NCBI RefSeq assembly: GCF_046119375.1 | Contig: NW_027362773.1 | Location: 211,048,001-211,112,000 of the forward strand | Source: Phyllobates terribilis | Lineage: Eukaryota | Length of the DNA stretch: 64,000 nucleotides | Reading direction: 5' to 3' | In this document: positions 20,032 to 26,000 of the stretch, piece after piece | Layout of the letters: every line of letters starts with the position of its first letter | Numbering within the stretch: the stretch's first letter is position 1 | Notes under the pieces: model-generated | The model's input: the letters and a program-made list of their open reading frames with translations, nothing else | What the model was told of the DNA's origin: nothing | Database searches by the model: none | Position numbers and translations under genes: made by a program

Positions 20032-23000
20032 TCAGTTCCTCAGTGCAGCCAGTCTGAAAGAAGAAAGGACAAGAGTCAGAAAGCTGTACCTGGACACTAG
20101 CTCCACAGTCACGAATACCTGCGGACCTATCGAATGTGTCCTTACATGGATTACCCATGCAAAGAGACTTGTGTCTGAAAACTAGTTACATTCCTTCCTC
20201 TGAATGATCGAATGCACGGCTTCTGTGTATTAGCCATCTACTTCCTAAGCCGGGTCATCCAGGTCATCCACTACTGTGCTTGTGCAAAATTGGTTCCTCA
20301 ATCTTACCGGCGTGACAGCTGGTCTTCCGGGGTGCGGGAGGAACTCTCTCCCACGGACGTCGCTTCCTGAGGAAGCTGGTGGAGCTGATCCATGACTTCC
20401 AAATCATTCTCCTTTGCGATCTGTATGATCAAGTTATCCACCTGTTCCTGCGGAGTGGTCAGGGTCATAGCTGATCCCATAGAGTCCTCCATCACCTGTG
20501 GAAGACAAAGCGTTAAATAGAAAGTGAAAATTAAACAAAGGAGGTTCATGTACCCAAAAATAAAGAGCCTTTAAAGGGTTGTCCAGCCTTAAAATAAGTG
20601 AAGGTCCACAACATGGCATCCTGACCGATCTGATACTGAAGACCTATCCTAAGGCCGGACAAACCCTTTAATCTGCATCTGAAAATTCTGCCGAATTCCA
20701 TGTTTCATTTGACCAAGGATCATTGATTTTTCCTGTTTTGCAAATGAATCATTGATTGCTCTGAACAAAAAGATGGCAATTTTAAGGTGCATGTAAGAGG
20801 TACACAAAGAGCAATAACCTAGTAGGAAGTATGGAAGGCTGGTCTCTATAGAACAGTGCCTGCAAACTGCTATACATGACTGCTACTTAGTGGACATAAG
20901 CGGCAGTGCATGATAACAGAGATTGAGATATTGTATACAGAACATAGAGAACAGTGGTCTCCGACTTACATTTTTACCCAGGAAATCTTCAAACAACTCA
21001 CTTATGGGTACCCATCAAAAGATGTTAGAGTCTGATACGTACCGACGTGTGAACATCCAAATTCTGAACCTGCTGCTCAAATTTATCCATAACAGCCGAC
21101 ACCTTCTGCAGGTCCATGGAGCCCAGCGCCTTGTCCAGAGCCTTTGTCACCTGAGCCATGTTCTTCGTCACCTATGTGCAAAAAAAAAAAAAAAAGCAGA
21201 AAACGGAAATAGGTCTTAGTATTTATATAGTAGTGACATCATTAAATCAACATTACATGGGATATATTCATTTACATAAGGATCCATCCTTTAAAAAATT
21301 TTTTAAATATAATATACACTGCTCAAAAAAATAAAGGAAACACTCAAATAACACATCCTAGATCTGAATGAATGAAATATTCTCATTGAATACTTTGTTC
21401 TGTACAAAGTTGAATGTGCTGACAACAAAATCACACAAAAATCATCATTGGAAATCAAATTTATTAACCAATGGAGGCCCGGATTTGGAGTCACCCCCAA
21501 AATTAAAGTGGAAAAACACACTACAGGCTGATCCAACTTTGATGTAATGTCCTTAAAACAAGTCAAAATGAGGCTCAGTATTGTGTGTGGCCTCCACGTG
21601 CCTGTATGACCTCCCTACAACGCCTGGGCATGCTCCTGATGAGGTTGCGGATGGTCTCCTGTGGGATCTCCTCCCAGACCTGGACTTAAGCATCCGCCAA
21701 CTCCTGGACAGTCTGTGGTGCAACGTGACGTTGGTGGATGGAGCGAGACATGATGTCCCAGATGTGCTCAATCGGATTCAGGTCTGGGGAACGGGCGGGC
21801 CAGTCCATAGCTTCAATGCCTTCATCTTGCAGGAACTGCTGACACACTCCAGCCACATGAGGTCTGCCATTGTCCTGCATTAGGAGGAACCCAGGGCCAA
21901 CCGCACCAGCATATGGTCTCACAAGGGGTCTGAGGATCTCATCTCGGTACCTAATGGCAGTCAGGCTACCTCTGGCAAGCACATGGAGGGCTGTGCGGCC
22001 CTCCAAAGAAATGCCAGCCCACACCATTGGGTCATTCCACATCAAATGGAACAGTTTTAAAAATCGTCCCCACTAGACCTTCTCCGATTTTGTTGAAAAT
22101 TTATAAGGATGTACATGTATGTTTGAAAAGAGGTTCTGTAAATTTTTAGGGCCAGATCTCAAATACATTGGGCACTGTTGACCTTTCACTGGAGGTTCCA
22201 CCAAGCCTACGGCTTCAGCTAAGAGGATTTTGCAAACTTTGGCACATAGCCATTAGAGTTCTATACTGGCTATGATGCTGAAATTTGGCATACTAGCTCA
22301 ACTTTTGCTGCTAAACACGATAAAATTATTACCGGCTATGACAAAACAATATTTCGGCCGCAATTTTGTGTCAAAGTAGCTTGTAAAACGCGTCGCATAA
22401 AATTTATGCCAAACTTTGCCCATATATAACTCAAGACCAAAAACCAATAGTAACTGGTGCTTTGCCCTGTACACCAAACATCTACATGACTTTGCATTGC
22501 TGCAATATCACGGTCAAACCATATGTATTTGTGGAAATATTCACACCCACATATGATGAAAAACTTAAAAAAAAAAAACGAATTTTACCTATTTTTAGGT
22601 CAAATTTCTCAAAAAGGGTACCCCTAAAATATATTAATTCTGATATCATTAGAGCACATTTTTCTCTACATGGATCATTGATGTTTTTTTTGGAGTCTCT
22701 CAGTTTAAGAAAAGAAAAATGCCACTGAACATGGTGTTATTTATGCGCGTAATGCATTGATTTTGTGCTTGATTTTCAGATTCTTATCACATGTTACAGA
22801 GTTGTATTGTTGCTAGCAATGTCTATTATAATCAAAAACCTATAAACCTGTTTATGAAAAGTTATTGACTATTGTTACATTTTAATGCATATATTATTTA
22901 TTTTTTAACGATGGAGAATGAAATTGATGAAGAATCGGCCCAGTGCTCTATCGGCCTTGCGAACAATTCGAAGTGCCACCTTAAGACATTCACCCATAGC

Positions 23001-26000
23001 AAGGATGAGTTGAAATTGTTTACAAGCTTTGGATTGGATGAACAGAAATTGCTGCGTCGACGAGTGGGACTAAATTTTGACGAACATTCACAAATCTGTT
23101 TACACCATGAAGCTTCATTCTTGACCAAATATGAGCATTTGCAAAAATCGTGTTGCAATCCTTTGGGGAAGAAAGGTCATAACACCAAAAAGAATTTGCG
23201 AGCTATCAATTTGCTAGCAGCTGACCAGTTGAACGAATTTACAAAGAATGATGTGAAGCCTGGCCAGAAGATGTGTGCATCATGTCGAAAAGAATTTGCT
23301 AACAGGAAAAAATCAGCTGATCCAGTTTCCTATGAATCAGATCCAGATGGAATGGAATGTTCTCCTGAAAGTCTAAATTCAAGCTTAACATCCATTGGCA
23401 TCTCTCCTCTGAAATATCCACGGGTAAGCCAGCGGGATTCACTTGGATATGCAAGGAGAAAGATAAGCAAGGTACAAAATGCATTTTCTAGCAAGATAGC
23501 TTCAATTGGAGGGCTTGAGCCGAAAGACATTGAGCAAACAAAAACAGCACAGTGCAAAATGTGTCTGGATTACAATCACCTTTTGGCAGATTTGAAGCAA
23601 AAGCTGCAGGTGTCCAGTCGGGCAGAAAAGGTCCAAATCTTGACATTGGCACCTAAAAGTTGGTCCATTAAGGCTATATCAGACGAATTCGGTGTCTCTG
23701 AACGAATGGTCAAACAAGCTCGAAAGCTTAAATGTGAACATGGGATCTTAGCCTTACCTAGAATCAAGTGTGGCAAGAAAGTTTCTGAGGAAGTGAAGAA
23801 AAAGGTGCAGGCATTTTTTGAGGATGATGAATTCAGTCGAATGTGCCCTGGTAAAAAAGACTATGTATCAGTGCGAATAGCAGGAGAAAAAAAAGCAGAT
23901 GCAAAAGCGACTATTACTGAGCAATATGAGGGAAATGTTTGTTGCCCATCGGGATCGGAATGGCCCTGAAATTGGATTTTCCAGGTTTTGTGAGCTTCGG
24001 CCAAAGTGGTGCGCAACCGCTGGATCTGCTGGAACACATTCCGTTTGTGTGTGTACCATTCACCAAAATGTCAAACTAATGCTTGCAGCATGCCCAAACA
24101 ATGATGACTACAAAGAGCTCATATGCAAAATGGTCTGTGGAATTGAATCCAAGGACTGTATGCTTGGCCGTTGTGATAAATGCCCGGGTCGTGAAGTTTT
24201 AAAAGAATTTCTAGTCAATGTGTTTGTCAACAGTGACCCTGAAGATATTATTGAGTTCAAACAATGGATTCACACTGATCGAGACACGCTTGATACCAAA
24301 CAACTGACTATAGAAGATTTCATTGAAGAATTGGTTTTGAAAATTTCTAAACTTTGCAGCCATCACTACATCGCCAAGCATCAAAGTAGCTATTTGAAAT
24401 CGTTGAAGGAAAATCTGAGACCTGGAGAGCTTGTGATCCTTATGGACTTTGCTGAAAATTACTCATTTATTGTTCAAGATGCCATTAAAGGTTTCCACTG
24501 GGAAAATAGTCAAGCTACAGTACACCCATTTGTAATTTACTTCAAGGAGTCAAATGGTGAAGCTGCGCAGAACATCAGCTTGTGCATAATCAGTGATTGC
24601 TCACGACATGACACAGTTGCAGTCCACACTTTCTTAACAGTAATTGTGGAGTATCTCAAGACTCTCATCTATGGGATTCGTCATATCCACTACTTCAGCG
24701 ATGGATCTGCAGCCCAGTACAAAAATTTCAAAAATTTTCTCAACTTGTGGCACCACAATGCTGATTTCAATATCAGCGCTGAATGGAATTTTTTTGGTAC
24801 CAGTCATGGAAAGTCGCCCTGTGATGGGATTGGAGGGACAGCAAAGAGGTTGGCAGCTCGTGCCAGTCTTCAACGCCCAACTGAAAACCAAATACTGACC
24901 CCGGTGGATTTATTCAACTTTTGCAACGAGCAACTGCATGGAATCAAATTTTTTTTTTGTTCCAAAAGAAAAAATTGACGAAATACGGGTAGTTCAAGAG
25001 GAAAGGTTCAAAGATGGACATACAATTGCTGGAACAAGAGAAAAATCACCAGTTTGTGCCAATTGATGACAAAAAGATTCGCATTTCAAGGGTGTCAAAT
25101 GACCCATCATCTTTCATTGCCCATGTAGATAGATCTGTCAGATCAGAAATGCCTTTTGTGCCAATTGCAAACCTCCAGCCAGGGCAATACATTGCCTGCA
25201 TTTACGATAGGAACTGGTGGATTGGAAATATTTCTGAAATTTCAGTCGACGACCATGATGCATTAATAAATTTTATGCATCCTCATGGACCAGCTAGCTT
25301 CTTTCACTGGCCTGTGAGAAATGATACATGCTGGATTCCCGAGCAGTCAATCATTGCAATAATTCCAGCACCAGCTGCAACAGCAATGGGCCGACAATAC
25401 AGCTTCTCTGAACCGATTATGTTGCAAATTCAGCAACAATTCCAGACCACGTAGACTGAACATTATGGCTTGGGAACCAACAAAAGATACTCAATATTAG
25501 GCTTGGGATCCTAGGCAAAGACACCCACCCTCAGGCTTCGGAACCTGCGATAAAGAGACCGCCCGCGGCTGGCCTTGCACGGCTATCGGCCATGGCTCCT
25601 AGGCGATGGGGCTGCCAATTCTCGAAAGACAGCATTATTACAATTCTTAATAGGATTATAATACCAATGCTTAGGGAATTGGTTGTGGTATAACCACCAT
25701 GGACCAACGCAAGGGTTTGAATAGTGCAGTTACCATTCATTGCTTATTAATAAATAACACCATGTTCAGTGGCATTTTTCTTTTCTTAAACTGAGAGACT
25801 CCAAAAAAAAAAACCAATGATCCGTGTAGAGAAAAATGTGCTCAAATGATATCAGAATTAATATATTTTAGGGGTACCCTTTTTGAGAAATTTGACCTAA
25901 AAATAGGTAAAATTCAGTTTTTTTAAGTTTTTCATCATATGTGGGTGTGAATATTTCCACAAATACATATGATTTGACCGTGATATTGCAGCAATGCAAA

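What the first reader, a model, noticed from the sequence alone, without database searches (positions are those of the whole stretch)
22944..23297. Sola2 transposase N-terminus resembles the N-terminal half of vertebrate ARL14EP
Seen: residues ~12-129 form a Cys/His-rich domain, CSIG...CH...LRRRVG...ICLHH...[10 protein letters not shown]...KKNLRAINL...PGQKMCASC. Recalled, not computed: human ARL14EP begins CSVG...ECHK...LRTG...ICFHH...EDLQKSCCDPF...KKNLHVIDL...PGWKLCPKC, with similar ligand spacing and a shared LQKSCC.P...KKNL..I.L block. ARL14EP is a known SETDB1-associated factor, and its C-terminal domain is conserved in invertebrates. Inference: vertebrate ARL14EP may be a chimera whose N-terminal domain was captured from a Sola2 transposase, which would put a transposon-derived module in the machinery that silences transposons. 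I cannot tell whether this link is already published.
Basis: partly seen in the sequence, partly recalled or inferred. Interest (0 to 1): 0.85.

Follow-up and report, generated by a model that had tools for sequence, protein, structure and literature searches.

The report
Transposase zinc domain reused in ARL14EP
The N-terminal zinc-binding domain of a frog Sola2-type jumping gene is clearly the same domain as the N-terminal half of ARL14EP, a partner of the gene-silencing enzyme SETDB1. The evidence indicates that bony vertebrates took it from such a transposon as one extra exon more than 400 million years ago.

Summary
Observation confirmed. Window 22944-23297 encodes residues 12-129 of a Cys/His-rich N-terminal domain. 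It belongs to a 4.4-kb DNA transposon (22029-26449) with about 700-bp terminal inverted repeats (TIRs), a 4-bp target-site duplication (TSD) CATT, Sola2-type motifs and three homopolymer frame slips.

The domain matches ARL14EP in three independent ways:
- phmmer E 1e-11 against 1.8 billion proteins.
- hhalign 99% probability, E 9e-18.
- An AlphaFold model (pLDDT 94) superposes on ARL14EP residues 5-125 at TM 0.84 and 1.2 Å.

No Pfam family or solved structure covers the domain.

- In ARL14EP the domain is one self-contained alternative first coding exon (Amia, Ascaphus).
- It occurs only in bony vertebrates.
- It is absent from shark and skate loci, and apparently from the short invertebrate homologues.
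- It has been lost in some frogs.
- ARL14EP copies form one clade that follows the species tree. That clade sits among about 850-aa transposases found in tunicates and vertebrates, with related N-domain fragments in ticks and a sea spider.
- Ray-finned fishes also carry an alternative THAP first exon.

The direction transposon to host is inferred (about 85%), not proven, because the tree cannot be rooted. DNA binding is untested. I found no publication of this link. The scan noted the same idea on another piece of this genome.

The parts
22025..22028 (.). Left copy of the 4-bp target-site duplication, CATT
   Evidence: The flanks read ...CACACCATT|GGGTCATTCC and GGAATGACTC|CATTACTGACC. An uninterrupted paralogous Tc1-like copy at 37165-37190 has a single CCATTACTGACC.
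22029..22744 (+). Left terminal inverted repeat, about 700 bp, starting 5'-GGGTCATTCCACATCAAATGGA
   Evidence: Inverted-repeat arms 22082-22744 and 25750-26408 are 95-100% complementary. The outermost 22 nt match at both ends only.
22911..23315 (+). N-terminal Cys/His domain of the transposase, residues 1-135. The finding's 22944-23297 corresponds to residues 12-129. This is the part homologous to ARL14EP residues ~4-125.
23616..23744 (+). Putative helix-turn-helix, residues 236-278
   Evidence: Weak HTH_23 match, E 2.5e-4, 21.2 bits, below the 24.6-bit cut-off. The same weak hit appears in the full-length relative P0004.
22929..25343 (+). Transposase coding region, co-linear with the 853-aa relative P0004. 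It is read in four pieces: 22929-23891, 23908-24972, 24917-25042 and 25044-25343. The frame changes fall at homopolymers: A8 at 23887-23894, T10 at 24949-24958 and A5 at 25041-25045. It contains [23 protein letters not shown] and [10 protein letters not shown].
   Evidence: tblastn of P0004. Sequence. Motifs compared with full-length relatives and with published Sola2 transposases.
25750..26449 (-). Right terminal inverted repeat, ending in the reverse complement of GAGTCATTCCATGTCAAGTGGA
26450..26453 (.). Right copy of the target-site duplication, CATT
21686..26986 (-). Tc1-like transposase remnant into which the element inserted. The pieces are 26986-26522 and 22045-21686.
   Evidence: ORF translations carry typical Tc1 motifs. 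Tc1 reading resumes across the insertion once 22029-26453 is removed.

Best explanation
The window holds a young, frame-slipped copy of a Sola2-type cut-and-paste DNA transposon.

Its transposase begins with a ~125-residue module that probably binds two zinc ions. The proposed sites are C12/C22/C63/H66 and C81/H~90/C122/C125. A weak helix-turn-helix and the DDE-type core follow. By analogy with other transposases, this N-terminal module most likely recognises the element's own ends (inferred, not tested).

The same module is the N-terminal half of ARL14EP/C11orf46 in bony vertebrates. There it is encoded by one self-contained alternative first coding exon. That exon lies between the ancestral short first exon and the exons that encode the linker and the Cys-rich C-terminal domain, which binds the SETDB1 MBD.

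The most likely history is as follows. In the common ancestor of ray-finned and lobe-finned vertebrates, a Sola2-type element inserted into intron 1 of ARL14EP. Its N-terminal domain became spliced to the downstream host exons. The rest of the element decayed. The new isoform was then kept under strong purifying selection, and was lost again in some frogs.

Functionally, ARL14EP would then be a transposase-derived nucleic-acid or chromatin-binding module joined to a SETDB1-docking module. In other words, it would be an adaptor that brings H3K9 methylation to particular places.
For: Shown:
- Homology by sequence, profile and predicted structure.
- The element is a genuine transposon with TIRs, a TSD and an empty-site paralogue. 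A 96%-identical second copy is annotated in Phyllobates terribilis.
- The N-domain plus core architecture is co-linear in eight ~850-aa proteins at 35-42% identity end to end. One is from the tunicate Styela.
- N-domain-bearing proteins also come from ticks, a sea spider, caecilians, sturgeon and bonefish. AFDB cluster hits add further hits whose organisms the tool did not show.
- ARL14EP gene structure. Amia: N-domain exon 3001-~3432, then 3939-4064 and 4386-4613. Ascaphus: 10001-10417, then 11825-11959 and 13621-13857, with the same donor position.
- Only the N-domain part of the transposases matches these loci.
- The exon is absent from the skate locus (gap-free) and the shark locus. All listed chondrichthyan proteins are C-only.
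- In the tree, 18 ARL14EP domains form one clade (UFBoot 100, SH-aLRT 99) whose inner branching follows the species tree. Its sister is the transposase-type fragment P0064 (93/86). Full-length transposases lie on seven other lineages.
- P0064 is 43-49% identical to ARL14EP N-domains, and the 848-aa transposase P0147 is 40-50% identical.
- All proposed ligands are invariant in 12 ARL14EPs from bird to bichir.

From the literature:
- The Cys-rich C-terminal domain binds the SETDB1 MBD. C11orf46 lacking it still binds histone H3 (PMC6739341, PMC13108219).
Against: - The tree is unrooted. A root on the ARL14EP stem would fit the reverse direction equally well.
- Most transposase-type hits come from unnamed transcriptome or metagenome contigs, so their taxa are known for only about a dozen.
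- The invertebrate ARL14EP lengths rest on an Atlas cluster summary and on papers, not on sequences examined here.
- Cyclostomes were not seen.
- The shark locus has a 1,753-N gap in intron 1.
- Published amoebozoan Sola2 transposases lack the domain, so it is not ancestral to all Sola2.
- Zinc binding and DNA binding are inferred. The fold has no significant solved relative.
- The reported non-CRD activity of C11orf46 is histone H3 binding, not DNA binding.
Confidence: 0.85

Rival explanations
1. Reverse capture. A Sola2 lineage picked up the N-domain exon from the ARL14EP gene of a stem bony vertebrate, then spread, partly by horizontal transfer, to other animals.
For: - The unrooted tree allows a root on the ARL14EP stem.
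- Amoebozoan Sola2 transposases lack the domain, so some Sola2 lineage did acquire it from somewhere.
- Transposons are known to capture host exons.
Against: - The domain would have had to arise de novo in ARL14EP within the short interval between the shark split and the ray-fin/lobe-fin split.
- The recipient transposon would then have had to reach tunicates, ticks, sea spiders and probably other invertebrates.
- Transposase domains are far more diverse than the ARL14EP clade.
- In ARL14EP the domain is an optional alternative first exon with its own ATG, placed inside an older intron. That is the layout expected from exonisation of an inserted element.
Confidence: 0.08
2. Common third source. 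ARL14EP and the Sola2 lineage each took the module from another carrier, either a different transposon family or another host zinc-finger gene.
For: AFDB cluster hits show more distant versions of the fold (TM 0.55-0.65, 17-24% identity). They sit at the N-termini of proteins that also carry BEN, C2H2, THAP, reverse-transcriptase or DUF7869 annotations.
Against: - The nearest relatives of the ARL14EP domain are P0064 and P0147. P0064 continues into the transposase-specific SP.K...R..GKRK segment. P0147 is a full-length transposase with the MDFSEN and [10 protein letters not shown] motifs.
- They are up to 50% identical to ARL14EP, much closer than the distant carriers.
Confidence: 0.06
3. Convergent or chance resemblance between two unrelated Cys/His-rich regions.
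For: Cys/His-rich segments can give spurious local matches.
Against: - E 1e-11 in a library of 1.84 billion proteins.
- hhalign E 9e-18 over 119 columns.
- 122 residues superpose at 1.2 Å.
- Blocks outside the ligands are shared: LQKSCC.P, KKNLRAI.L, PG.K.C.
Confidence: 0.01

Closest known systems
ARL14EP / C11orf46 (ARF7EP), the SETDB1-complex adaptor
   Same: Residues ~4-125 of ARL14EP and residues 12-129 of the window protein are the same domain. This holds for sequence, profile and predicted fold, and the Cys/His ligands are the same.
   Different: The window protein has no ARF7EP_C / Cys-rich C-terminal domain. It continues instead into an HTH and a DDE-type transposase core. It is a transposase, not an ARL14EP orthologue. 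The frog's own ARL14EP (P0239, 136 aa) lacks the N-domain.
Sola2 DNA transposons (Bao, Jurka and Kapitonov 2009; Sola2 transposases DFa-2 and PPa-1 in PMC3627910)
   Same: - 4-bp TSD.
- TIRs.
- A single large transposase with the same ordered motifs. The window has [11 protein letters not shown] ... ISDCSRHD ... [12 protein letters not shown] ... [10 protein letters not shown]. DFa-2 has VIVLMDFKEN ... FSDVLNHC ... FFWSDGAKHFKS ... QYHGKSDVD.
   Different: - The amoebozoan Sola2 proteins have a different N-terminus without the Cys/His module.
- This element has unusually long TIRs (~700 bp), against 12-22 bp in those families.
- The match is at motif level only. No Repbase or Dfam profile could be run.
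Host-transposase fusion genes formed by alternative splicing (Cosby et al., bioRxiv 10.1101/2020.05.07.082677), for example KRAB-transposase fusions and THAP-containing fusions
   Same: A transposase N-terminal domain is supplied as an exon with a splice donor. It is joined to pre-existing host exons that encode a chromatin-repressor interaction module.
   Different: - ARL14EP and Sola are absent from that study's text and fusion table.
- The event is older (bony-vertebrate ancestor).
- The donor superfamily is Sola2.
- The host partner docks directly on the SETDB1 MBD rather than being a KRAB domain.
THAP zinc finger (P-element transposase, THAP1-11) and ZAD
   Same: - C12...C22...C63-x2-H66 resembles the THAP C2CH signature.
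- Residues 9-67 align weakly to the P-element THAP domain. Residues 79-135 align weakly to ZAD treble-clef domains.
- ARL14EP of ray-finned fishes has an alternative true THAP first exon.
   Different: - No Pfam THAP hit.
- The first Cys pair is spaced x9, not x2-4.
- The scores are not significant: Z is 3.0 (THAP) and 5.0 (ZAD), below the tool's stated noise level of 7-8, and the Foldseek E values are above 1.

Membership tests
Sola2 DNA transposon | Terminal inverted repeats flanked by a 4-bp target-site duplication | tested here: met
   The TIRs are 22029-22744 and 25750-26449. The TSD CATT sits on both sides, and there is an empty-site paralogue at 37165-37190. PMC3627910 states that 4-bp TSDs are characteristic of Sola2.
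Sola2 DNA transposon | Transposase with the Sola2 series of catalytic-core motifs | tested here: met
   The agreement is at motif level, in order, with the published Sola2_DFa-2 and PPa-1 sequences. The same motifs are conserved in seven full-length relatives. No statistical alignment to a Sola2 reference was run.
Sola2 DNA transposon | Significant match to curated Sola2 consensus or profile (Repbase, Dfam) | not testable with these tools
   No repeat library is available. Pfam has no model for the core.
ARL14EP orthologue | C-terminal ARF7EP_C (PF14949) Cys-rich domain that binds the SETDB1 MBD | tested here: not met
   The three ORF pieces of the window element give no PF14949 hit. The window protein is therefore not an ARL14EP. 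Only the N-domain is shared.
Host-transposase fusion gene (claim about ARL14EP) | The transposase-like domain is encoded by a discrete exon spliced to host exons | tested here: met
   In Amia L001 and Ascaphus L003 a single exon runs from the ATG to a GT donor after ...SE/SD. Two shared downstream exons follow.
Host-transposase fusion gene (claim about ARL14EP) | The host part predates the fusion, and outgroups have the gene without the domain | tested here: met
   - The skate locus L006 (no gaps) and the shark locus L002 have the three ancestral exons but no N-domain.
- Seven chondrichthyan proteins are C-only.
- Arthropod clusters are ~106 aa (a lead only).
- Cyclostomes were not examined.
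Host-transposase fusion gene (claim about ARL14EP) | The host copy is nested within transposase diversity in a rooted tree | tested here: inconclusive
   It is nested when rooted on the tick tandem domains or at the midpoint. The true root is unknown.
Host-transposase fusion gene (claim about ARL14EP) | Long-term conservation of the captured domain | tested here: met
   Identity is 60-83% across full-length ARL14EP (N-domain included) from bird to teleost. All Cys/His ligands are invariant, and the clade topology follows the species tree.
THAP domain | C-x2-4-C-x35-53-C-x2-H signature, a Pfam PF05485 match and the THAP fold | tested here: not met
   The spacing is C-x9-C-x40-C-x2-H. There is no PF05485 hit. 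The structural scores are not significant.

The most novel reading that the evidence does not exclude
ARL14EP began as a transposon repressor. The end-binding domain of a Sola2 transposase was fused to a module that docks on the SETDB1 MBD, and so delivered H3K9 methylation to Sola2 ends.

In living bony vertebrates, humans included, it would still act as a sequence-specific recruiter of SETDB1 that does not depend on KRAB zinc-finger proteins. Ray-finned fishes would have a second, interchangeable THAP 'reader' exon in the same gene.
Probability: 0.3. Interest if true: 0.85.

Novelty: new member of a known kind. Interest (0 to 1): 0.72.

Why it matters
ARL14EP/C11orf46 is a conserved partner of SETDB1. 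It is implicated in neurodevelopmental disease and in reproductive-trait GWAS loci, yet only its C-terminal domain has a known role and a solved structure (8hfp covers residues 186-260).

Recognising the N-terminal half as a transposase-type two-zinc module has several consequences:
- It gives that half a concrete, testable function, namely nucleic-acid or chromatin targeting.
- It adds what appears to be the first Sola-superfamily domain in a conserved vertebrate gene.
- It shows one gene locus sampling two different transposase-type reader domains, Sola2-N and THAP, as alternative first exons.
- It explains why sturgeon and other (organism not shown) transposon fragments are auto-annotated as 'ARL14 effector protein'.

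Tried and rejected
- Pfam, on the window ORFs and on the 150 best hits, gave no family for the N-domain or the core.
- A PDB sequence search with the N-domain gave nothing.
- Foldseek against PDB gave nothing significant.
- The VIA-align wide search gave only sub-noise ZAD (Z 5.0) and THAP (Z 3.0) matches. I do not file the domain under either.
- The first word-based homologue search found only the frog's own second copy.
- I looked for relics of the rest of the transposase in the ARL14EP loci of Amia and Ascaphus and found none.
- DNA could not be fetched for the ARL14EP loci of Callorhinchus, Heterodontus, Scyliorhinus, the newer Chiloscyllium assembly or Phyllobates.
- An AU test was considered and dropped. 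The competing directions differ only in root position, which such a test cannot address.
- A formal alignment to the published Dictyostelium Sola2 protein was not run, because it would have required typing a long sequence.
- Direct repeats in the TIR gave only short two-copy families, for example A(A/C)TTTGGCA. They are too weak to call binding sites.
- Literature searches for ARL14EP or C11orf46 combined with transposase, transposon, Sola or THAP found no paper making this link.

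
Full report
**What is in the window**

The coordinates 22944-23297 encode residues 12-129 of an ORF that starts at 22911. The ORF belongs to a 4,421-bp element at 22029-26449.
- Its inverted-repeat arms at 22082-22744 and 25750-26408 are 95-100% complementary.
- The repeat continues, less well conserved, to the termini GGGTCATTCCACATCAAATGGA and GAGTCATTCCATGTCAAGTGGA. These occur nowhere else in the window.
- The element interrupts a Tc1-like transposase gene on the minus strand.
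- A paralogous uninterrupted Tc1 copy at 37165-37190 shows a single CCATTACTGACC. CATT is therefore a 4-bp target-site duplication.

Against the 853-aa relative P0004, the coding region is co-linear from residue 16 to 812. It changes frame three times, each time at a homopolymer: A8 at 23887-23894, T10 at 24949-24958 and A5 at 25041-25045. A 96%-identical protein is annotated in Phyllobates terribilis. The window is therefore from that frog or a close relative, and the family has more than one copy.

**Is it Sola2?**

Pfam has no model for the core. The published Sola2 transposases of Dictyostelium and Polysphondylium (PMC3627910, supplement 3) carry motifs in the same order as the window protein:
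- VIVLMDFKEN ... FSDVLNHC ... FFWSDGAKHFKS ... YHGKSDVD in the published proteins.
- [11 protein letters not shown] ... ISDCSRHD ... [12 protein letters not shown] ... [10 protein letters not shown] in the window protein.

That paper also states that 4-bp TSDs mark Sola2. I accept the label at motif level. A Repbase or Dfam profile test could not be run. Those amoebozoan proteins do not have the Cys/His N-terminus.

**Is the resemblance to ARL14EP real?**

Yes.
- phmmer of the 135-aa domain against 1.84 billion cluster representatives returned 491 proteins at E ≤ 1e-3. One of them, P0073, is ARL14EP of ducks according to UniRef. It scores E 1.0e-11 at 34% identity, query 12-127 against 4-120.
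- A profile of twelve full-length ARL14EPs (A1) aligns to the window domain with hhalign probability 99.0 and E 9.2e-18 over 119 columns.
- An AlphaFold2 model built on 69 domains (A2) has mean pLDDT 94.1 and pTM 0.83.
- In AFDB Swiss-Prot its only significant matches are ARL14EP of human, cow, mouse and rat, residues 5-125. TM by query is 0.84 and rmsd 1.2 Å.
- No solved structure matches significantly. The PDB holds only ARL14EP 186-260 (8hfp).

The near-invariant residues are C12, C22, C63, H66, C81, P84, C122 and C125. The corresponding residues are invariant in ARL14EP. I read these as two zinc sites. This is an inference from conservation, not from geometry.

**Who carries the domain, and in what context?**

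Eight proteins of 826-882 aa are co-linear with each other over the N-domain, linker and core, at 35-42% identity. One is from the tunicate Styela clava. Named shorter hits come from ticks (two tandem copies of the domain), a sea spider, caecilians, sturgeon, bonefish and the frog. AFDB cluster hits and ESM-Atlas neighbours point to further invertebrate carriers; the Atlas rows name molluscs, cnidarians and echinoderms (leads only). Among the 150 best hits, only the ARL14EP has any ARF7EP_C signal, and no Pfam family covers the domain.

**ARL14EP across taxa**

Searches with P0073 and with profile A1 gave three kinds of protein.
- N-domain plus ARF7EP_C proteins of about 260 aa. These occur in mammals, birds, squamate reptiles, the frogs Ascaphus and Spea, coelacanth, bichir, sturgeon, gar, bowfin, and elopomorph and osteoglossomorph teleosts; a truncated N-domain form was also returned from a tortoise.
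- C-only proteins of 134-160 aa with a short first exon. These occur in all seven cartilaginous fishes listed and in most frogs, including Phyllobates (P0239). They also occur in a salamander and a caecilian, and as minor isoforms in lizards and platypus.
- THAP plus ARF7EP_C isoforms. These occur in ray-finned fishes: bowfin, gar, Scleropages, Albula, a moray, Denticeps and a catfish.

Only the best 120 of 259 hits were shown, so cyclostomes and invertebrates were not seen directly. The Atlas lists arthropod ARF7EP_C clusters with a 106-aa representative. The worm and fly orthologues are described in the literature only through the C-terminal domain.

**Gene structure**

| Species (locus) | First exon(s) | Shared downstream exons |
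|---|---|---|
| Amia (L001) | N-domain exon 3001-~3432 | 3939-4064, 4386-4613 |
| Ascaphus (L003) | N-domain exon 10001-10417 | 11825-11959, 13621-13857 |
| Skate Leucoraja (L006, 33.5 kb, no gaps) | 10001-10294 | 18377-18514, 23265-23492 |
| Shark Chiloscyllium (L002) | 10069-10179 | 20395-20532, 27944-28171 |
| Nanorana (L004) | 10001-10066 | 13011-~13145, 16473-16697 |

- In Amia, the THAP isoform P0228 uses the same two downstream exons and starts more than 3 kb upstream.
- In Ascaphus, the splice donor falls at the same point as in Amia.
- Full-length transposases match these two loci only over the N-domain exon, with E down to 1e-24. No other part of a transposase is left.
- The skate locus has no N-domain or THAP match.
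- The shark locus likewise has none, but it has a 1,753-N gap in intron 1.
- The neobatrachian frog Nanorana has lost the exon.

**Phylogeny**

The quick tree of 117 domains and the careful tree of 62 domains gave three results.
- The 18 ARL14EP domains form one clade (quick tree SH-aLRT 99; careful tree UFBoot 100, SH-aLRT 99). Its branches are short and its inner topology follows the species tree.
- Its sister is P0064 (93/86). This fragment continues into the transposase-specific segment and is 43-49% identical to ARL14EP.
- Full-length transposases lie on seven other lineages.

This argues for one event before the ray-fin/lobe-fin split, followed by vertical descent. The tree is unrooted, so it cannot by itself give the direction.

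**Direction and mechanism**

I favour transposon to host, at about 0.85, for three reasons.
- The domain is tied to the transposase core in distant animal groups, while the ARL14EP fusion is confined to bony vertebrates.
- The outgroup loci have the older three-exon gene without it.
- In ARL14EP it is an optional, self-contained first exon inside an older intron. That is the pattern described for transposase capture by splicing (bioRxiv 10.1101/2020.05.07.082677).

The reverse direction needs a de novo origin in a narrow time window, followed by wide horizontal spread. A third-party donor is possible but is not favoured, given the closeness of P0064 and P0147.

Function is inferred. In the transposon the module would recognise the element's ends. 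In ARL14EP it would be a targeting module joined to the Cys-rich domain that docks on the SETDB1 MBD (PMC13108219). C11orf46 without that Cys-rich domain still binds histone H3 (PMC6739341). Histone binding rather than DNA binding is therefore a live alternative for the N-terminal half.

**Novelty**

I found no paper that links ARL14EP/C11orf46 to a transposase, to Sola or to THAP exons. The text and fusion table of the transposase-capture study contain neither ARL14EP nor Sola. The searchable library is incomplete, so prior publication cannot be excluded.

The kind of event is known. This instance, the Sola2 donor, the SETDB1-docking partner and the dual reader exons appear to be new. An earlier first-stage note on another piece of this genome raised the same idea (s1-245112). 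A note on this window gave the same element boundaries and the three homopolymer slips (s1-209132), both of which I reproduced independently.

Noticed in passing
L001 (Amia ocellicauda ARL14EP locus) and proteins P0228, P0252, P0257, P0235, P0242, P0268, P0270: Ray-finned fishes have an ARL14EP isoform whose N-terminus is a true THAP domain (PF05485). It is spliced to the same two downstream exons as the Sola2-like N-domain isoform. One gene therefore uses two transposase-type zinc-finger first exons.
   Followed up: partly
L004 (Nanorana parkeri) and proteins P0239, P0236, P0243-P0250: The N-domain exon is absent from the Nanorana locus. Most frog, salamander and caecilian ARL14EP models are C-terminal-only, including that of Phyllobates terribilis. 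The exon is present in Ascaphus and Spea. This points to secondary loss within amphibians.
   Followed up: partly
P0016 / AFDB A0A444V1X4 (sturgeon) and AFDB A0A4Y2A5B6: Transposase N-terminal fragments are auto-annotated as 'ARL14 effector protein'. P0016 continues into the transposase-specific segment and has no ARF7EP_C. These are name-transfer errors caused by this homology.
   Followed up: partly
P0007 (Rhinatrema, 524 aa) and P0012 (Geotrypetes): A caecilian 'SPINDOC-like' model carries a Spin-doc zinc finger at 98-142 and the Sola2-type N-domain at 374-506. It is either a second host fusion or a gene-model chimera with a transposon.
   Followed up: no
P0021 (Ixodes hexagonus) and P0062 (Amblyomma americanum): Tick proteins contain two tandem copies of the N-domain. 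The two copies form separate, well-supported sister pairs across the two tick genera.
   Followed up: no
window 23887-23894, 24949-24958, 25041-25045: All three frame changes of the transposase lie in homopolymer runs, and the TIRs are up to 99% identical. The copy is very young, or the slips are assembly errors in an intact gene.
   Followed up: partly
window 22235-22244, 22281-22290, 22407-22419 (mirrored in the right TIR): A short motif, A(A/C)TTTGGCA, recurs in direct and inverted orientation inside the long TIR. It could be a transposase-binding site, but the evidence is weak.
   Followed up: no
P0127: A 317-aa protein with this eukaryotic transposon domain is deposited as a Flavobacterium metagenome-assembled-genome protein on a 3-kb contig. 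It probably reflects eukaryotic contamination of the bin.
   Followed up: no
window 21686-22045, 26522-26986 and ~37165: Tc1-like transposase remnants. One was split by the Sola2 insertion, and a paralogous copy preserves the empty site.
   Followed up: partly
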